From IMG/VR virus record IMGVR_UViG_3300012931_000759, positions 248,001 through 312,000 of that record: a stretch of 64,000 bases of DNA; one strand, given 5' to 3'. Shown here piece by piece: positions 24,674-32,474 of the stretch; position 1 is the stretch's first letter; every line of letters starts with the position of its first letter. The notes under the pieces were generated by a model. It searched no databases. It worked only from the letters and a program-made list of their open reading frames with translations, and had not been told where the DNA came from. The position numbers were made by a program, and so were the translations under genes.

Positions 24674-24745
24674 GATGTTAAAATCCATCGGACTGCCTCC
24701 TTTGAAGTGTCTGGCTTACCGGTGGAAAATCGATGGAGGGCTGTC

Positions 24746-27574
24746 ATGAGTACAACACGTCTGCCTGTGGATTTAAAAAGGGTGGCATATTACGACGGGC
24801 AGCAGCTCACGCGCGATGACCTGCGCGACGAGCAGAACCGGCACGTCGGCATCGACGCGGCCACGGTCGCTAACTTCCTCGGAAGCGGGGTAGTGAGCGA
24901 CTCGGCAATTCCGCAGGTCCTTCTGGACACGGCGGAACTGAATCCCCAGCAGCAGGCGTTGCTCGACGCTTACTCGTTCGATGGGCAGAATGTCTACATC
25001 GGAACCGGACTGAAGCAGGTGTCGGATCCCGTGAATGGCGTGCTGCTAGCAGTCACGCTAACTGGCGTGGATCTCGTCGGCTCGATGGCGACCAAGGTAG
25101 CCATTATTGGCGAAACTTTCGGCGGGGGCCTTGTACACGACGAGCTTGTGTTCGAGGAGAATGGCACACAAGTTACGCGGGGGCGGTACAAAGAGGTGTT
25201 TGGCATCCTCCTCAATGACTTCGCAGGCAATCTATTCGGAAGTCTCTCCCCGGCAACCATCTATGTCGGCGGATATCAACTCGTGGGACGCTGTGTCGTC
25301 AGAGAGGCGGAGGCCTTGGAGGTCTCCATGGACACCCTGATAGCTTCGCAAACGGCTCAACCCAACCAGTTCTTCGGGAATTTCAAGCTCGGCAGCCCGT
25401 CATACACGCTGACTTCGTTATTCCAGGAGATCATTGGACCCTCGCATTCGCCCTCCGACCTTGGCATTAGTATTGCCTCGGTCGCCCAGCGGCAGATCGA
25501 CCCGGACGACGTGACAACCAGGATAGGGCAGAAGTTCCTGGCCACAGGGACGAACATCCAAAAGATCTCGATACTCGCGTCAGTGCTAAGGGACGAAAGC
25601 ACCCTGCCGGGAAACGAATACAATTGGTCGGGCCAGATCGTACTCAATCTCCTGGCGCTCCAGACGACAGTCGATTGTCCGGTGAAGCCGGTGCCCGATA
25701 ACCTCGAGGATTTCGATCCGGATCCCACAGTGGTAGCCCAGCTGTCGCTGGATGCGACGGATCTCGTGCGGCAAGGTGTCGTGCTGGATGGTTACGCTAG
25801 AAAAATCGATTTCGTGCTGACAGAGACCTCGATCGCCGATCCGCTGATTTCCCCCATTGAGCAGGGGCGTCACTATGTGTTCACCATCGGGCGCGCAGGC
25901 AATGCCAACGTCGGCACCCTGCTGTTCGAGGAAGCGGTCCACTCCACCCTGAATGGCTACATGGTAATCTACGACGGTACCCAATGGGTCAACATCTATG
26001 AGAGCGACATGTGGTTCGAGGTCTACGGCGATTATGTGAAGATCGCCGACGGCATCGCCTATCAGGAGGGCGTCGGTGTGGAGATCCCACGCTTGGCAGA
26101 GGATGCCAGCGGCGTCGAGTCCCCGAACTACGTGGGCCTGGTTCCATTCGCAACCACTGCCAAGGACGCCAAGAACTTCGTCCTCATGGAGGTGGAGACA
26201 ACCTACAGCGACACGCAGCAGGATCCACGAACGGGCAATCCGGTGTCCTCCAGGCTAGCGCCCTCCGCAGCCGTATCCATGGTTAAAGAGACGGATTTCC
26301 AGACGCAGCTTGCGGCGGACTTGGTGCCGCTCGCGCTGGCGCGTGCCACGGACGAGAACCCGAGGGGAAATCCCGTGTCCATATTGGGCACAACTACATT
26401 GGCTGGTGCTGTGTATGGCAACCACATACATGTTATCGCGCCGAACGCCGATCTGCTGTCGAACAACATCGTTGGCTCCATGTTGCTGCCGGACTCTGCC
26501 GAGAACAAGGAGTACCGCATTGTCTCTGTGTTGCTTAGCATGGACGCCTACGGCGATGTGGACGGTGACGGCGAGATCACATTCGCCGACCTTGCCATCG
26601 TGAACACTTGGCTACCCGACGGCTACGACCTCTCGGACCCCGTAGACCAGCAAAAGCTGATCGACGGCAAAGTCCCCCTGGACCGCGTCCTGCGGGCCGA
26701 CGTAAACGGGGACGGGAAAGTGGATATCACTGACGCGACGCTCATCCAGGCCTTCCTGGACAAGAGCATTTCGACGTTCCCGGCCGGTTCCTCTTTCCAG
26801 CGTATACTTATCAGGGTGGAGAACAAGTTGAATCCGCTGGCGGCCCAGGCCGACATGGCGGCGGACAACCCAGATTTCACCACTGTTCCGTTCGTCTCGA
26901 TTCCGTGGACGGTTGGCTACTTTAGGACATGGCTGCCTGACCGGATTGACCTGTGTGACATGCGTCGGTTGGTGCCGACCACGTTCACCGCTTTGCCAGA
27001 TGGCGATACCTGCTACGGTGGCCGGAACGACTTCTTTATTCCCGGTAACCAGCTATTGGACGGCTATGTTATGGACAAGTTCGGCGACCCGCATCGGCTC
27101 GACTTCGAGGTTGCCCATCTGTCCCTGAGGATCCCTGTGACCGACACGCTGGGTAACCCTACAATCCTCGACGGCTATGTGGGATTCCTACTATTCGACT
27201 CCTTCGTGGCCGAATCCTCGCTCGGCAAAACTTCGGCAGGTTTCCAGGCCATGAAGTACAGTGACCGGAGTTTCGTCCAGATCGGCGATTTCGGGGCCGG
27301 GCGTGTGCGCATCACAGCCTCACTACAGTCGCTAGCGAACGCCTGGCCGTCCCCGTTTGGTGGGAATGTGGACGACCTGGTCGGAATGTACTACGACCCA
27401 ACCACTTCGCTCCTGGTGCTACAAACCAGGAACCTGCTGAACGACGGCTATGGCAACCTACTGCCGTCCCAATGTATGCGGATCCTGGTAACTGTCTACC
27501 TGAAGAAGGCAGGATTCGCGAATACGACGCAAGATGTGACGGATGGCCAGATGCGCACCCTGTTGGGTATTTGA
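24746..27574 (+). CDS. Tail fibre / baseplate-attached protein with a dockerin-like domain
   Basis: Start moved to ATG 24746 (SD GGAGG). N-terminal RVAYYDGQQLTRDDLRDEQ is typical of baseplate-attached fibre proteins of contractile systems. Paired GDVDGDGEITFADL / ADVNGDGKVDITDA repeats. Contains 5 DGY. Confidence 0.7.
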   Translation: MSTTRLPVDLKRVAYYDGQQLTRDDLRDEQNRHVGIDAATVANFLGSGVVSDSAIPQVLLDTAELNPQQQALLDAYSFDGQNVYIGTGLKQVSDPVNGVLLAVTLTGVDLVGSMATKVAIIGETFGGGLVHDELVFEENGTQVTRGRYKEVFGILLNDFAGNLFGSLSPATIYVGGYQLVGRCVVREAEALEVSMDTLIASQTAQPNQFFGNFKLGSPSYTLTSLFQEIIGPSHSPSDLGISIASVAQRQIDPDDVTTRIGQKFLATGTNIQKISILASVLRDESTLPGNEYNWSGQIVLNLLALQTTVDCPVKPVPDNLEDFDPDPTVVAQLSLDATDLVRQGVVLDGYARKIDFVLTETSIADPLISPIEQGRHYVFTIGRAGNANVGTLLFEEAVHSTLNGYMVIYDGTQWVNIYESDMWFEVYGDYVKIADGIAYQEGVGVEIPRLAEDASGVESPNYVGLVPFATTAKDAKNFVLMEVETTYSDTQQDPRTGNPVSSRLAPSAAVSMVKETDFQTQLAADLVPLALARATDENPRGNPVSILGTTTLAGAVYGNHIHVIAPNADLLSNNIVGSMLLPDSAENKEYRIVSVLLSMDAYGDVDGDGEITFADLAIVNTWLPDGYDLSDPVDQQKLIDGKVPLDRVLRADVNGDGKVDITDATLIQAFLDKSISTFPAGSSFQRILIRVENKLNPLAAQADMAADNPDFTTVPFVSIPWTVGYFRTWLPDRIDLCDMRRLVPTTFTALPDGDTCYGGRNDFFIPGNQLLDGYVMDKFGDPHRLDFEVAHLSLRIPVTDTLGNPTILDGYVGFLLFDSFVAESSLGKTSAGFQAMKYSDRSFVQIGDFGAGRVRITASLQSLANAWPSPFGGNVDDLVGMYYDPTTSLLVLQTRNLLNDGYGNLLPSQCMRILVTVYLKKAGFANTTQDVTDGQMRTLLGI

Positions 27575-29783: not shown

Positions 29784-29969
29784 ATGAGCGAATTGTCTAA
29801 GTATGCGGAACGAAAGCAGATTAACATCCGGTTGGAATTAGAACTCCACGATTTTCTAGTAGAGTACGCCAGGCAGAACTACAAAACCGTCACGGCCGTC
29901 GTGCGTGAGATGATAGCCGCCCTCTACCGACAGCACCAGGCGGCACAGAAGACTGCGGACGATGAATAG
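29784..29969 (+). CDS. Ribbon-helix-helix (Arc/CopG-like) DNA-binding protein
   Basis: KQINIRLELELHDFLVEYARQNYKTVTAVVREMIAALY fits the beta-alpha-alpha RHH pattern. The start is more likely 29784 (or 29772) than 29613. Confidence 0.7.
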   Translation: MSELSKYAERKQINIRLELELHDFLVEYARQNYKTVTAVVREMIAALYRQHQAAQKTADDE

Positions 29970-30038
29970 GCGCATGGACGCGATGGCTATGCTGATGGGA
30001 TTTCATTGACGGTGCTTGCCGCCATGTACAATTGCGAT

Positions 30039-30201
30039 GCGGTTGCGGAGCAACCGTGGATCGAAATTTAAATGACGCGCGGAGAATTTATCTCCGTGCC
30101 TTGATGGCTATATCTGTTCCTGCGGATAGCAGGAATACAACCGTCTATCAGCTTTGCTCAACTATGGATAAATCCAGATAGGCGGAAAGGTAGCAGAAAG
30201 C
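30039..30201 (+). ncRNA. Putative structured RNA leader upstream of the glycan operon
   Basis: Four consecutive 7-9 bp stems plus a nested 4-bp stem in about 150 nt of non-coding DNA (see findings); no known family recognised. Confidence 0.4.
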
Positions 30202-30203
30202 AA

Positions 30204-32474
30204 ATGAAAGTAAGATGGCACACAATGGCCGGCACCAACCATTCGTGGGCGTTTGTAGCCCAGGCCTTGGCACGGGCGATGAAACAGAGTGGTCATTCTG
30301 TGTTCATCAAATCGACAAACGGTCTAGAGCATTTTCCCGAAGACCTGAAGCCTCTTCTTCTGCCGGGCTATCACAGCCACCCCTCGTTACCAGAGGTTGC
30401 CTTCCTTGGCGAAAAGGGCATCACCAACTCCTTGTCTGATATTCCCAGTTGTGACATAAGAGAGTCTCCAGACCAGAACAGGCCATACGACCTGGAACTC
30501 GCCTACACCATCCTCTACCAGATACCGCGTCGGTTCTATGCCGAATCGGCATGTAGAATGGTTATTTGGAACTTCGAGAGTTCAATCATGCCCCCTGGAT
30601 GGCAGATGTATCATCGCGGCGTGGATTACATCCTACCATCCAGCCAGTACTCCTCAGATATTTTCCTCCAGAATGGTGTACCGGCCTCGAAACTTGTAGT
30701 TGTGCCGCATGGCGTGTACCGTGAGATGTTCCACCCCGGCATTCCGCCGTTCAAACTTCACACACAGAAGCGGATCAAGTTCCTACACAACGCAATCCCA
30801 CACCACCGCAAGCTCCATGAACGCGTCATCGGGGCGTATCTTGACGCATTCACCGGGGACGACGACGTGTGCCTGGTGCTGAAGACCAAGTTCCTCCAGC
30901 CTTCCAAGGACAAGCCCTTCGAGGTCGACGTGCGCGAAATCCTGGAACGGAAACTGAAAGGCTGCCCGAATCCGCCCGAGATCGAGGTGATCACATCCTT
31001 CGTCCCCGATATCGGATCGCTCTACACTGCCTGCGATGCGGTCGTCAGTATGAGCTCGTGTGAGGGCTATTGTCTTCCTTTGCTTGAGGCCTTGGCTTGC
31101 GGAAGTGTAGTTATCGCGCCCCGGCATGGCGGCCAACTTGATTTCCTGGATGACAGGAATGCGCTACTCGTGGACACTGGCGAGATGAAGGCTCCCTTGA
31201 GTATGCAGTACTGGACGCATGCCCCGGAGGCCGTCGTGGGCGACCCTAGCGAGAGGCATTGCGCCGAACTCATGCGGCGCGTATACGCCGATCCGGCGGG
31301 GGAAAAGGCGCGCGTCGCCGAGGCAGCTCGCGTGACAACCGAGCGGTTCACGTGGGAGGCGGCAGCCAAACAGATCGTCGACCTGGCCGAGACTCGCATG
31401 ACCGAAAAGGCAATTTCTCCGTCGCCCCGCAAGAGAAGCGTCCTGTACGTGGTGCCCTACGACATGGCCGGTGGCGGCGAAATGTGGGTACGCGAGACCA
31501 TCAAACGCCTCGACAAGAGCCGGTACGAGCCGAGCGTTGTGTTTCCGCTGGGAGCGAGGCCCGAGCTGGTCGCCCTGTTCAGCGACCTCGGGGTGCCATG
31601 CGACGACCTGAGGAACCAAGGGACAGGCAATGCGCTGAAGTGTATGATCGAGTCCGGCAAACCTGACATCGTCCATTTCTACAACAGCCTACAGGTCTAC
31701 AGCCTCCTTATGCGCACGATCCAGGAGGGTGCGTGGGGAGGCAAGCTGGTCGAGACCGTACACAGCGAACTGATGTGGCCGGACTCGATGATGAAGGTCG
31801 CCGCACGACGCGGCGTCTCCATGATCGTCGGCGTCTCCGAGACCATCTGCGCGCGACTTGCGCGCCTCGGCAATCCGAATGTCAGGCACCTTCCGCAGCA
31901 GGTCGCATGGGACCGCTTCTCCGTCCCGAGGGGCAAGGAGGTTCTCGGAGAGATGGGGTTACCCACCGACAGGTTTACTGTGGGTACGGTGGCGCGCCTC
32001 TCGCCCGAGAAGAACATCCCGATGGTCCTGGCCTGCGCCAGGGCGATGCCCGACGCGCTGTTCGTGGTCGTGGGTGAGGGCCCGCAGGCCACAGTCCTGA
32101 ATGGAATGGCTTCCGGCCTCGCAAACGTGGTGTTCGCCGGACGGCGATCCGACGTCGAACGGTTCTATGCCGCCTTCGACGTCCTGCTTCTACCATCCAC
32201 CATGGAGGGTCTGCCGCTCACGATACTCGAGGCGATGGCGGCCGGGACACCGGTCGTTGCCTCCAAGGTCGGTGCCATTCCCGAGGTGGTGTCCGACGGA
32301 ACGAACGGTTTCCTGGCCTCCAAGGCGCAGGAGTACGTGGCGGCCTTGGAGAAGCTGCGCGACCCGGCATCCAGGGATAGCATGGGCAAAAATGCCATGG
32401 CGCTGGCTGACATCCTGAGAATGCGCGGCAACACCCAGAACATTAATACATTGTACGACTCGCTATTCAGGTAA
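30204..32474 (+). CDS. Double GT4-type (GT-B) glycosyltransferase
   Basis: Two GT-B units: SSCEGYCLPLLEALACG and PSTMEGLPLTILEAMAAGTPVVAS, each with the EX7E motif. Confidence 0.9.
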   Translation: MKVRWHTMAGTNHSWAFVAQALARAMKQSGHSVFIKSTNGLEHFPEDLKPLLLPGYHSHPSLPEVAFLGEKGITNSLSDIPSCDIRESPDQNRPYDLELAYTILYQIPRRFYAESACRMVIWNFESSIMPPGWQMYHRGVDYILPSSQYSSDIFLQNGVPASKLVVVPHGVYREMFHPGIPPFKLHTQKRIKFLHNAIPHHRKLHERVIGAYLDAFTGDDDVCLVLKTKFLQPSKDKPFEVDVREILERKLKGCPNPPEIEVITSFVPDIGSLYTACDAVVSMSSCEGYCLPLLEALACGSVVIAPRHGGQLDFLDDRNALLVDTGEMKAPLSMQYWTHAPEAVVGDPSERHCAELMRRVYADPAGEKARVAEAARVTTERFTWEAAAKQIVDLAETRMTEKAISPSPRKRSVLYVVPYDMAGGGEMWVRETIKRLDKSRYEPSVVFPLGARPELVALFSDLGVPCDDLRNQGTGNALKCMIESGKPDIVHFYNSLQVYSLLMRTIQEGAWGGKLVETVHSELMWPDSMMKVAARRGVSMIVGVSETICARLARLGNPNVRHLPQQVAWDRFSVPRGKEVLGEMGLPTDRFTVGTVARLSPEKNIPMVLACARAMPDALFVVVGEGPQATVLNGMASGLANVVFAGRRSDVERFYAAFDVLLLPSTMEGLPLTILEAMAAGTPVVASKVGAIPEVVSDGTNGFLASKAQEYVAALEKLRDPASRDSMGKNAMALADILRMRGNTQNINTLYDSLFR

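What the first reader, a model, noticed from the sequence alone, without database searches (positions are those of the whole stretch)
30039..30201. Multi-hairpin non-coding leader with possible pseudoknot over the start of the glycan operon
Seen in sequence: stems cggttgc/gcaaccg (30040-46/30050-56), gcgcggaga/tctccgtgc (30077-85/30091-99), ttcctgc/gcaggaa (30117-23/30129-35) and ccgtctatc/gataggcgg (30141-49/30177-85), the last enclosing tgga/tcca. The loop bases gcttt+gct (30151-58) could pair with agc..aaagc (30192-30201), just before ATG 30204. A weak TTGACG-N15-TACAAT (30006-30032) would start transcription near the first hairpin. Inference: a cis-regulatory RNA (riboswitch-like or protein-binding operator) or a small RNA controlling the glycan operon. 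I do not recognise a known family.
Basis: partly seen in the sequence, partly recalled or inferred. Interest (0 to 1): 0.6.

Follow-up and report, generated by a model that had tools for sequence, protein, structure and literature searches.

The report
Relic transposon guide-RNA scaffold in phage
The hairpin-rich "leader" is the leftover right end of an IS607-type jumping gene (last tnpB codons plus its guide-RNA scaffold) that landed between two genes of a giant phage; it was not built to control the sugar-transferase operon.

Summary
The hairpins are real: the region folds at z = -4.4 against shuffles. They are not a leader belonging to the glycan operon. The window lies in a 340-kb jumbo-phage contig. 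A second copy, 90% identical, lies 154 kb away. There it follows a TnpB zinc-ribbon/RuvC-III remnant (PF07282, 51.8 bits) and fragments of an IS607-type serine recombinase.

More than 80 relatives end their tnpB gene with the same hairpin architecture. These come from a Thiomargarita MAG, Desulfobacterales, cyanobacteria, phages and metagenomes. Copies diverge exactly after ...GTAxCAG / ...TATCGG, so the transposon right end is at window 30196.

A covariance model built only from 16 relatives finds window 30059-30196 (75.4 bits, E about 1e-17) and the second copy, and nothing else in the phage. Covariation is strong: 35 of 36 pairs show double-sided changes.

A related 318-kb phage has the same two genes with one base between stop and ATG. 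So 29970-30196 is a 227-nt insertion.

The region is therefore a decayed IS607 right end carrying a TnpB omega-RNA scaffold. It has no tnpB, no tnpA and no recognisable left end. The proposed pseudoknot and the first hairpin are not conserved. This is an ordinary kind of object. What remains open is whether the orphan scaffold is still used in trans.

The parts
29784..29969 (+). Upstream 61-aa gene. It is the conserved partner of the glycosyltransferase gene and probably the first gene of the operon.
   Evidence: 56% aa identity to the 62-aa ORF that directly precedes the orthologous GT gene in related phage L166. No Pfam family. My reading of it as a ribbon-helix-helix protein is untested.
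29970..30196 (+). 227-nt inserted segment: a decayed right-end fragment of an IS607-family transposon.
   Evidence: Absent from the syntenic junction of L166 (TAA + 1 nt + ATG) and of L167. It ends at the family's right-end boundary.
29970..30002 (+). 5' part of the insert, origin unresolved.
   Evidence: No consistent similarity to the second copy's upstream part or to relatives.
30003..30058 (+). Decayed tnpB 3' codons (frame 30002.. reads FID..[deletions]..LRCGCGATV).
   Evidence: Gapped alignment to the second copy's VIDVSEAYTSKTCSYCGKIYN..LRCGCGATV codons, with two deletions in the window copy. Identity is 90% from 30032 onward.
30059..30196 (+). Omega-RNA (TnpB guide RNA) scaffold. It overlaps the last tnpB codons (DRNLNDARRIYLRAL...) and runs to the transposon right end.
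   Evidence: Full-length match (model positions 1-138) to covariance model R1, built from 16 relatives with the phage copies left out: 75.4 bits, E about 1e-17.
30077..30099 (+). Helix P1 (30077-84 with 30092-99), inside the GARxIxLRA codons.
   Evidence: All 8 pairs show double-sided changes in the family; 96.6% of cells paired. The two differences from the second copy convert G-U to A-U and A-U to G-U.
30103..30114 (+).
   Evidence: GAUG/UAUC here; GUCG/CGAC, GGCG/CGCC and GGGA/CCCC in relatives.
30117..30135 (+). Helix P3, a variable hairpin (30117-22 with 30130-35).
   Evidence: Same position in every relative but a different sequence in each. All 6 pairs covary; 96.4% of cells paired.
30136..30192 (+). 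Closing helix (30136-38 with 30190-92) around the long stem (30141-48 with 30178-85). The inner part of the long stem is degraded in this copy.
   Evidence: Three inner pairs (30149/76, 30150/75, 30152/73) are non-standard here but paired in the second copy. The second copy folds at -78.2 kcal/mol, z = -6.3.
30186..30196 (+). Conserved 3' tail AAAGGTAGCAG. The transposon right end lies after 30196.
   Evidence: The tail AAAGGTAACAG / AAATGTAACAG / AAAGTATCGG ends every family member. Copies with the same scaffold have unrelated sequence immediately after it. Three different flanks follow 30196-98 in run X1.
30197..30216 (+). Flank that would serve as the guide if the scaffold were transcribed and loaded. 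It includes the 7 nt before ATG 30204 and the first codons of the GT gene.
   Evidence: Inference from the TnpB/omega-RNA mechanism described in 10.1101/2023.03.14.532601 and 10.1101/2023.11.20.567912. The only exact match in the 340-kb contig is the site itself.
30204..32474 (+). First glycosyltransferase gene (756 aa, GT4/GT1 domains).
   Evidence: Pfam PF00534 at 141 bits. The start MKVRWHTM is conserved in L166 and L167.

Best explanation
Window 29970-30196 is the decayed right-end fragment of an IS607-family transposon. Such elements carry a serine-recombinase TnpA and the RNA-guided nuclease TnpB. The fragment inserted between a small conserved gene and the first glycosyltransferase gene of a jumbo phage, 7 nt before the ATG.

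What remains is the last roughly 50 codons of tnpB, broken by deletions, and the omega-RNA scaffold that overlaps them (30059-30196). In an intact element this scaffold is bound by TnpB. The 16-20 nt of flanking DNA transcribed after the right end then guides TnpB to cut the empty donor site, so that the element is copied back.

Here tnpB, tnpA and the left end are gone, so the fragment cannot move or make its own nuclease. The hairpins are inherited scaffold helices, not devices evolved to regulate the operon.

Shown: repeat status, family membership, right-end boundary, covariation, and absence from relatives.

Inferred: that it is now functionless apart from side effects, such as separating two formerly abutting genes and replacing the sequence upstream of the ATG. 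Also inferred: that its position reflects insertion at a purine-rich ribosome-binding region.
For: 1. A second copy at G000:C1:123501-123665 is 90% identical over window 30032-30196, with unrelated flanks.
2. That copy continues upstream into a frame matching PF07282 (TnpB/Cas12f TNB domain) at 51.8 bits, above the cut-off. Further upstream lie MerR-HTH and resolvase fragments of an IS607 TnpA.
3. Full-length relatives are IS607 units: MerR + Resolvase TnpA followed by TnpB with OrfB_IS605 + TNB domains.
4. Relatives share the post-DRDLNGA hairpin architecture and the 3' tail. Multi-copy families diverge exactly after CAG/CGG.
5. RNAalifold on 18 sequences gives 41 pairs, 17 of them compensatory. 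On 81 distinct sequences, 91.8% of cells are paired against 63.7% for shuffles and about 40% for slid partners, and 35 of 36 pairs have double-sided changes.
6. Model R1, built without the phage copies, hits exactly the two copies in the whole 340 kb: 75.4 and 87.9 bits.
7. There is an empty site in related phage L166, and a different selfish gene at the same junction in L167.
8. The window copy looks more decayed than the second copy. It has three broken inner pairs and a lower model score. It folds at -63.5 against -78.2 kcal/mol. The codon for the motif's second Asp reads N.
Against: No RNA data exist for this phage, so transcription, processing and any effect on the operon are untested.

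The outer scaffold helices are still intact, and most differences between the two copies keep the pairs. This could mean continued selection on the RNA, although it could equally date from when the elements were active.

A third copy with a different flank exists in the same metagenome at the same depth. A cognate TnpB able to use this scaffold in trans therefore cannot be excluded.

The first 33 nt of the insert have no identified origin.
Confidence: 0.88

Rival explanations
1. Orphan guide RNA still in use. The scaffold is transcribed, from read-through or from the TTGACG-N15-TACAAT site. It is then loaded in trans by a cognate TnpB encoded elsewhere, either in the unassembled part of the phage, in a co-resident element or in the host. 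Its guide (30197-~30216) would direct cleavage of genomes that carry the uninterrupted junction next to a suitable TAM. That would bias inheritance of this allele during co-infection.
For: The outer helices and 3' tail are intact and the model match is full length. A third copy at equal depth exists in the source metagenome, and a collapsed 82-nt contig at about 2.7x depth shows that the other copies keep tnpB codons upstream. Gene-less elements encoding omega-RNAs that must be served in trans are described in 10.1101/2023.03.14.532601.
Against: The only full-length TnpB in the assembled 340 kb belongs to another lineage with an unrelated 3' region. Model R1 finds no other scaffold. The inner stem of this copy is degraded. 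The TAM of the family was not determined. There are no RNA runs.
Confidence: 0.08
2. Exapted insertion. The relic now matters for the operon. It might supply a promoter (30006-30032), or its folded 3' end, which lies 8-18 nt before the ATG, might tune translation of the first glycosyltransferase after the insertion separated the two formerly abutting genes.
For: The insertion ends 7 nt before the ATG and replaced whatever preceded it. Deletions brought two old tnpB hexamers to a 15-nt spacing. In 14 of 43 family junctions a gene starts within 20 nt of the right end, against 11% of random positions. Such insertions are evidently tolerated.
Against: The promoter scan finds nothing and no terminator-like element is present in the segment. 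Relatives manage without the segment. The second copy's flank differs, so nothing specific to this operon is conserved.
Confidence: 0.1
3. One reading: an evolved riboswitch-like or protein-binding leader, or a small RNA, dedicated to the glycan operon.
For: Strong folding and a position just before the operon's first large gene.
Against: The segment is absent from orthologous junctions. The same sequence sits before an unrelated lipoprotein-like gene 154 kb away. The proposed pseudoknot crosses the transposon boundary and is not kept. No Rfam family matches, even at E <= 10. The structure is explained by the omega-RNA family.
Confidence: 0.02

Closest known systems
TnpB omega-RNA (reRNA) encoded at the right end of IS200/IS605- and IS607-family transposons
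   Same: It overlaps the 3' end of tnpB and has a multi-helix scaffold with covariation. It ends exactly at the transposon right end, so that the flank becomes the guide. It is associated with a serine-recombinase TnpA in full-length relatives.
   Different: This copy has lost tnpB, tnpA and the left end. The scaffold lineage is not represented in Rfam. TnpB binding and guide use were not tested.
RAGATH-18-derived reRNAs of IS607 TnpBs (PMC11061315)
   Same: The same kind of object: a conserved structured RNA just downstream of, and overlapping, IS607 tnpB.
   Different: No RAGATH-type Rfam model matched the window at E <= 10 or 12 relatives' loci at E <= 1. It is a different scaffold lineage. 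I did not check that Rfam 15 holds a RAGATH-18 model.
PATE-like, gene-less IS elements that encode only an omega-RNA (10.1101/2023.03.14.532601)
   Same: A guide-RNA scaffold without its nuclease gene. If it is used at all, it would need TnpB in trans.
   Different: PATEs keep both transposon ends and can be mobilised. No left end could be found here, so this is a truncated relic and not a miniature transposon.
TldR-type guide RNAs (nuclease-dead TnpB repressors, 10.1101/2023.11.30.569447)
   Same: A TnpB-derived guide-RNA scaffold located next to genes it might affect.
   Different: No tnpB-like or tldR-like gene lies next to the scaffold; the only TNB-domain hits are about 154-162 kb away. 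The guide matches only its own flank.

Membership tests
IS607-family right end / TnpB omega-RNA | Sequence continuous with the 3' coding end of a tnpB gene (TNB zinc ribbon and the DRDxNGA motif). | tested here: met
   The second copy's upstream frame hits PF07282 at 51.8 bits, above the 26.3 cut-off. The window copy keeps the frame ..CGCGATVDRNLNDARRIYLRAL at 90% nt identity, with upstream deletions. The window peptile alone gives no Pfam hit.
IS607-family right end / TnpB omega-RNA | Conserved secondary structure supported by compensatory changes. | tested here: met
   17 of 41 pairs are compensatory in 18 sequences. In 81 sequences, 35 of 36 pairs show double-sided changes and 91.8% of cells are paired, against 63.7% shuffled and 36-42% slid. 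That alignment was fitted to the model, which favours the structure.
IS607-family right end / TnpB omega-RNA | Match to a covariance model built from other members. | tested here: met
   Model R1, built from 16 relatives without the phage copies, hits window 30059-30196 at 75.4 bits, E about 1e-17, model positions 1-138.
IS607-family right end / TnpB omega-RNA | Sharp 3' boundary, with copies carrying unrelated sequence immediately after the conserved tail. | tested here: met
   Window versus second copy. Multi-copy relatives. Three different flanks after 30196-98 in run X1.
IS607-family right end / TnpB omega-RNA | Serine-recombinase TnpA (MerR HTH + resolvase) in the same element. | tested here: met
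   Present in full-length relatives L008 and L011. Present as fragments in the second copy. Absent from the window copy.
IS607-family right end / TnpB omega-RNA | Presence/absence polymorphism: an insertion relative to related genomes. | tested here: met
   L166 has the small gene's stop, 1 nt, then the ATG of the orthologous GT gene. L167 also lacks the segment.
IS607-family right end / TnpB omega-RNA | The RNA is expressed, processed and bound by TnpB, and the flank acts as guide next to a TAM. | not testable with these tools
   No RNA runs hold this sequence. The family's TAM and left end were not resolved.
Mobilisable miniature element (PATE-like) | Both transposon ends retained. | tested here: not met
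   Nothing upstream of 30003 resembles the second copy's left part or the relatives. IS607 ends lack inverted repeats (10.1101/2023.11.20.567912), so a short left-end remnant cannot be fully excluded.
Riboswitch / conserved cis-regulatory leader | Conservation upstream of orthologous genes, or a match to a curated family. | tested here: not met
   Absent in L166 and L167. Rfam gathering search gave 0 hits; at E <= 10 there were only chance-level hits.
Intrinsic terminator / attenuator | G+C-rich hairpin followed by a U tract. | tested here: not met
   No terminator-like site in 29970-30203. P1 is followed by CUUGAUGG.
TldR-type RNA-guided repressor locus | An adjacent tnpB-derived, nuclease-dead gene. 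| tested here: not met
   TNB-domain hits in the 340 kb lie only near 116 kb and 123 kb, with a weak one at 142 kb. None is in the window.

The most novel reading that the evidence does not exclude
The phage keeps orphan omega-RNA scaffolds as working guides. A cognate TnpB would be supplied by the unassembled third copy, another element or the host. The scaffold at 30059-30196 would then target the uninterrupted small-gene/glycosyltransferase junction of competing relatives. That would make it a phage-versus-phage gene drive at a junction that also hosts a homing endonuclease in another relative. Alternatively it could tune the operon in the manner of TldR.
Probability: 0.06. Interest if true: 0.6.

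Novelty: new member of a known kind. Interest (0 to 1): 0.3.

Why it matters
The result reclassifies a possible new riboswitch as a transposon fossil. That prevents a false regulatory annotation of a large phage glycosylation operon.

It also documents an omega-RNA scaffold lineage of IS607 TnpBs, with strong covariation, that Rfam does not cover. Members occur in giant-sulfur-bacterium, deltaproteobacterial and cyanobacterial MAGs and in many phage contigs.

Finally, it shows that one gene junction in a jumbo-phage group has been colonised independently by two kinds of selfish element. If the orphan scaffold were still used in trans, it would be a natural case of guide-only TnpB modules in phages.

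Tried and rejected
- Rfam at gathering thresholds over the whole window gave nothing. At permissive E-values on the region and on 12 relatives' loci it gave only chance-level hits, plus an unrelated tRNA and a partial HEARO.
- Exact or degenerate DNA patterns of the element in IMG/VR gave no match.
- blastn against GenBank phages gave no match.
- A single-peptide scan of IMG/VR confirmed no relative. An alignment-based scan then worked.
- A search for a left end or further homology upstream of 30003 found only a 9-nt match (TCATTGACG) and a gapped, weak alignment.
- An attempt to define the family's left end and TAM from multi-copy relatives failed. Similarity runs into tnpA remnants and the loci are cut at 2.5 kb, so it stayed unresolved.
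- A search for other targets of the would-be guide in the 340 kb found only the site itself; short matches were at chance level.
- The full-length TnpB at about 116 kb was considered as the cognate protein. It was rejected as the obvious partner because it belongs to another lineage with an unrelated 3' region.
- REP-like DNA palindromes were considered because both strands fold. They were rejected because the G-U pairs, the covariation and the link to tnpB fit a + strand RNA.
- The two large protein searches, structure prediction and complex prediction were not used.

Full report
**Observation.** Window 30033-30215 folds at -63.5 kcal/mol. Dinucleotide shuffles give -45.6 +/- 4.0, so z = -4.4, and 0 of 200 shuffles fold as well. 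The reverse strand also folds well (z = -4.1). Rfam gives nothing at gathering thresholds and only chance-level hits at E <= 10. The promoter-like TTGACG-N15-TACAAT exists, but its 15-nt spacer falls outside the consensus scan, which finds 0 promoters. The scan also finds no terminator in the segment.

**Context.** The window is bases 248001-312000 of a 340,392-bp IMG/VR virus contig, a jumbo phage estimated 84% complete. The ORF starting at 30204 is a 756-aa GT4/GT1 glycosyltransferase, followed by further transferase and methyltransferase genes. A 61-codon gene ends at 29969.

**The segment is a repeat.** A second copy lies at contig 123501-123665. It is 90% identical to window 30032-30196 and has unrelated flanks. 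Similarity stops after GTAGCAG. The next bases are AAAGCAAATG in the window and GAGAATGG in the second copy.

Upstream of the second copy the frame reads VIDVSEAYTSKTCSYCGKIYNIGSKKVLRCGCGATVDRDLNGARGIYLRAL. This matches the TnpB/Cas12f TNB domain PF07282 at 51.8 bits, above the cut-off. Further upstream are fragments of an IS607-type TnpA: a MerR-like HTH (..TLGVHPNTLWRWETKG) and the resolvase start (IIYARVSTNDQ).

The window copy keeps the frame ..CGCGATVDRNLNDARRIYLRAL. A gapped alignment suggests that 30003-30037 is the same tnpB remnant with two deletions.

**Relatives.** Scans with the TnpB C-terminal peptide, and then with an alignment of it, recovered relatives from three collections:
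- species genomes, including a Thiomargarita MAG (80% aa), Desulfobacterales, Poribacteria and Dulcicalothrix;
- 54 viral contigs;
- 80 metagenome contigs.

Full-length relatives are typical IS607 units. They carry a MerR-HTH + Resolvase TnpA followed by a TnpB with OrfB_IS605 and TNB domains.

In all of them the DNA after the DRDLNGA codons has the same layout:
- a hairpin inside the GARGIxLRA codons;
- a 4-bp hairpin;
- a hairpin of variable sequence;
- a long stem;
- a tail ending ...AAAGGTAACAG or ...AAAGTATCGG.

Copies that share a scaffold have unrelated sequence directly after this tail. That places the transposon right end at window 30196.

**Structure.** RNAalifold on 18 sequences predicts 41 pairs, 17 of them with compensatory changes. 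A covariance model, R1, was built from 16 relatives with the phage copies left out. Searched against the whole 340 kb, it finds exactly two significant hits:
- window 30059-30196, at 75.4 bits, E about 1e-17, full model length;
- the second copy, at 87.9 bits.

Aligning 83 family members to the model gives 91.8% paired cells. Shuffled partners give 63.7% and slid partners 36-42%. Double-sided changes occur in 35 of 36 pairs. That alignment was fitted to the model, which favours the structure.

Helices in window coordinates:
- P1: 30077-84 with 30092-99;
- P2: 30103-06 with 30111-14;
- P3: 30117-22 with 30130-35;
- closing helix: 30136-38 with 30190-92;
- long stem: 30141-48 with 30178-85.

The proposed pseudoknot uses 30197-30201, which lies outside the element, and neither of its halves is kept in the second copy.

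**It is an insertion.** Two related jumbo phages carry the orthologous glycosyltransferase at 66% and 61% aa identity from residue 1, with the same MKVRWHTM start.
- In L166 the homologue of the small upstream gene (56% aa identity) ends TAA. One base later the glycosyltransferase ATG follows.
- In L167 a LAGLIDADG homing-endonuclease gene (PF03161, 82 bits) abuts and overlaps the same start.
- Model R1 finds no credible scaffold in either locus; the only hit is a 52-nt minus-strand match at 13.5 bits.

So window 29970-30196, 227 nt, is an insertion into a formerly tight gene junction. The operon probably starts upstream of the small gene.

**State of the copy.** The window copy is more degraded than the second copy:
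- it has a lower model score;
- it folds at -63.5 against -78.2 kcal/mol, z = -6.3;
- three inner pairs of the long stem are non-standard;
- the second Asp of the DRDLN motif reads N. From my own knowledge of TnpB, that Asp is the RuvC-III catalytic residue.

The differences in the other helices are transitions that keep the pairs through G-U. This fits an RNA on the + strand. It does not tell whether selection acted after the element decayed.

**More copies.** In the wetland metagenome run that probably yielded the contig, assembly contigs break inside the repeat. Three right-end junctions are seen at equal depth:
- the window's;
- the second copy's;
- a third, with flank TCCTAACCCGTGCC...

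The third flank is not in the assembled 340 kb. No RNA run holds the sequence.

**Mechanism.** Published work shows that TnpB-omega-RNA complexes of IS605 and IS607 elements cut the empty donor site next to a TAM, using the right-end flank as guide. It also shows that IS607 TnpA integrates at a GG dinucleotide without inverted repeats or target duplication (10.1101/2023.03.14.532601 and 10.1101/2023.11.20.567912).

By inference, an IS607 element integrated in the purine-rich stretch before the glycosyltransferase ATG and later lost all but its right end. In 14 of 43 distinct family junctions an ATG-initiated ORF of at least 60 codons starts within 20 nt of the right end. Random positions give 11%. 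Such placements are therefore common or well tolerated in this family.

The remaining scaffold would still fold. With the flank 30197-~30216 as guide, a cognate TnpB supplied in trans could load it. The only full-length TnpB in the assembly (406 aa, near 116 kb) belongs to another lineage with an unrelated 3' region.

**Comparison and verdict.** The object is a member of the known class of TnpB omega-RNAs and IS607 right ends.
- It does not match any RAGATH-type or other curated family in Rfam 15 (PMC11061315).
- It is not a PATE-like miniature transposon, because no left end was found.
- It is not a TldR-type locus, because no adjacent tnpB-like gene exists.

The reading as a dedicated leader of the glycan operon is not supported. 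This is a new member of a known kind, of modest interest. The open point is whether orphan scaffolds in this phage are still used in trans.

Noticed in passing
L167:1605-2504 (IMGVR_UViG_3300005826_000294): In a related 302-kb phage, a LAGLIDADG_2 homing-endonuclease gene with an N-terminal HTH sits directly upstream of, and overlaps, the orthologous glycosyltransferase start. The same junction therefore hosts a different selfish element there.
   Followed up: partly
G000:C1:123247-123665 (L002:1247-1665), outside the window: The second copy is a heavily deleted IS607 element. TnpA N-terminal fragments are fused to the last 67 codons of tnpB plus an intact-looking omega-RNA scaffold. It ends 12 nt before the ATG of a signal-peptide/lipoprotein-like ORF, and AGGAGA straddles the boundary.
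   Followed up: partly
G000:C1:~114950-116610 (L003:152-1809), outside the window: A separate IS607-like unit of another lineage: a resolvase C-terminal fragment followed by a 406-aa TnpB (PF07282 at 65.9 bits). It sits just upstream of a large tail-fibre-like ORF.
   Followed up: partly
run X1, laid on window 30084-30198: A third right-end copy (5,007-nt contig, depth 10.5, flank TCCTAACCCGTGCCGAG...) is absent from the assembled 340 kb. A collapsed 82-nt contig at about 2.7x depth shows that the other copies keep the ..VLRCGCG tnpB codons.
   Followed up: partly
family loci L002-L149, right-end junctions: In 14 of 43 distinct junctions an ATG-initiated ORF of at least 60 codons begins 0-18 nt after the right end, against 11% at random positions. 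Often ..CGG|AG or ..CAG|GAG forms a Shine-Dalgarno-like motif across the boundary.
   Followed up: partly
L100:960-1097 and 2754-2889; L072:1488-1561; L121:5087-5204: One metagenome locus holds two right-end scaffolds in tandem. One relative has a tRNA gene about 60 nt after the right end. One locus holds a partial HEARO (IscB-type) RNA.
   Followed up: no
window 24707-27574 and 2911-24347: A 955-aa ORF with a type I dockerin domain (PF00404, 34.7 bits) and very long ORFs (1585, 1084 and 2302 aa) lie upstream of the glycosyltransferase block. The + strand is almost continuously coding from 30204 to about 58600.
   Followed up: no
L007, L010, L012 (Thiomargarita sp. MAG DYNO01): The closest genomic relatives of the phage's tnpB remnant (74-81% aa) and scaffold come from a Thiomargarita MAG and similar metagenome contigs. 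This may hint at the host lineage but was not examined.
   Followed up: no
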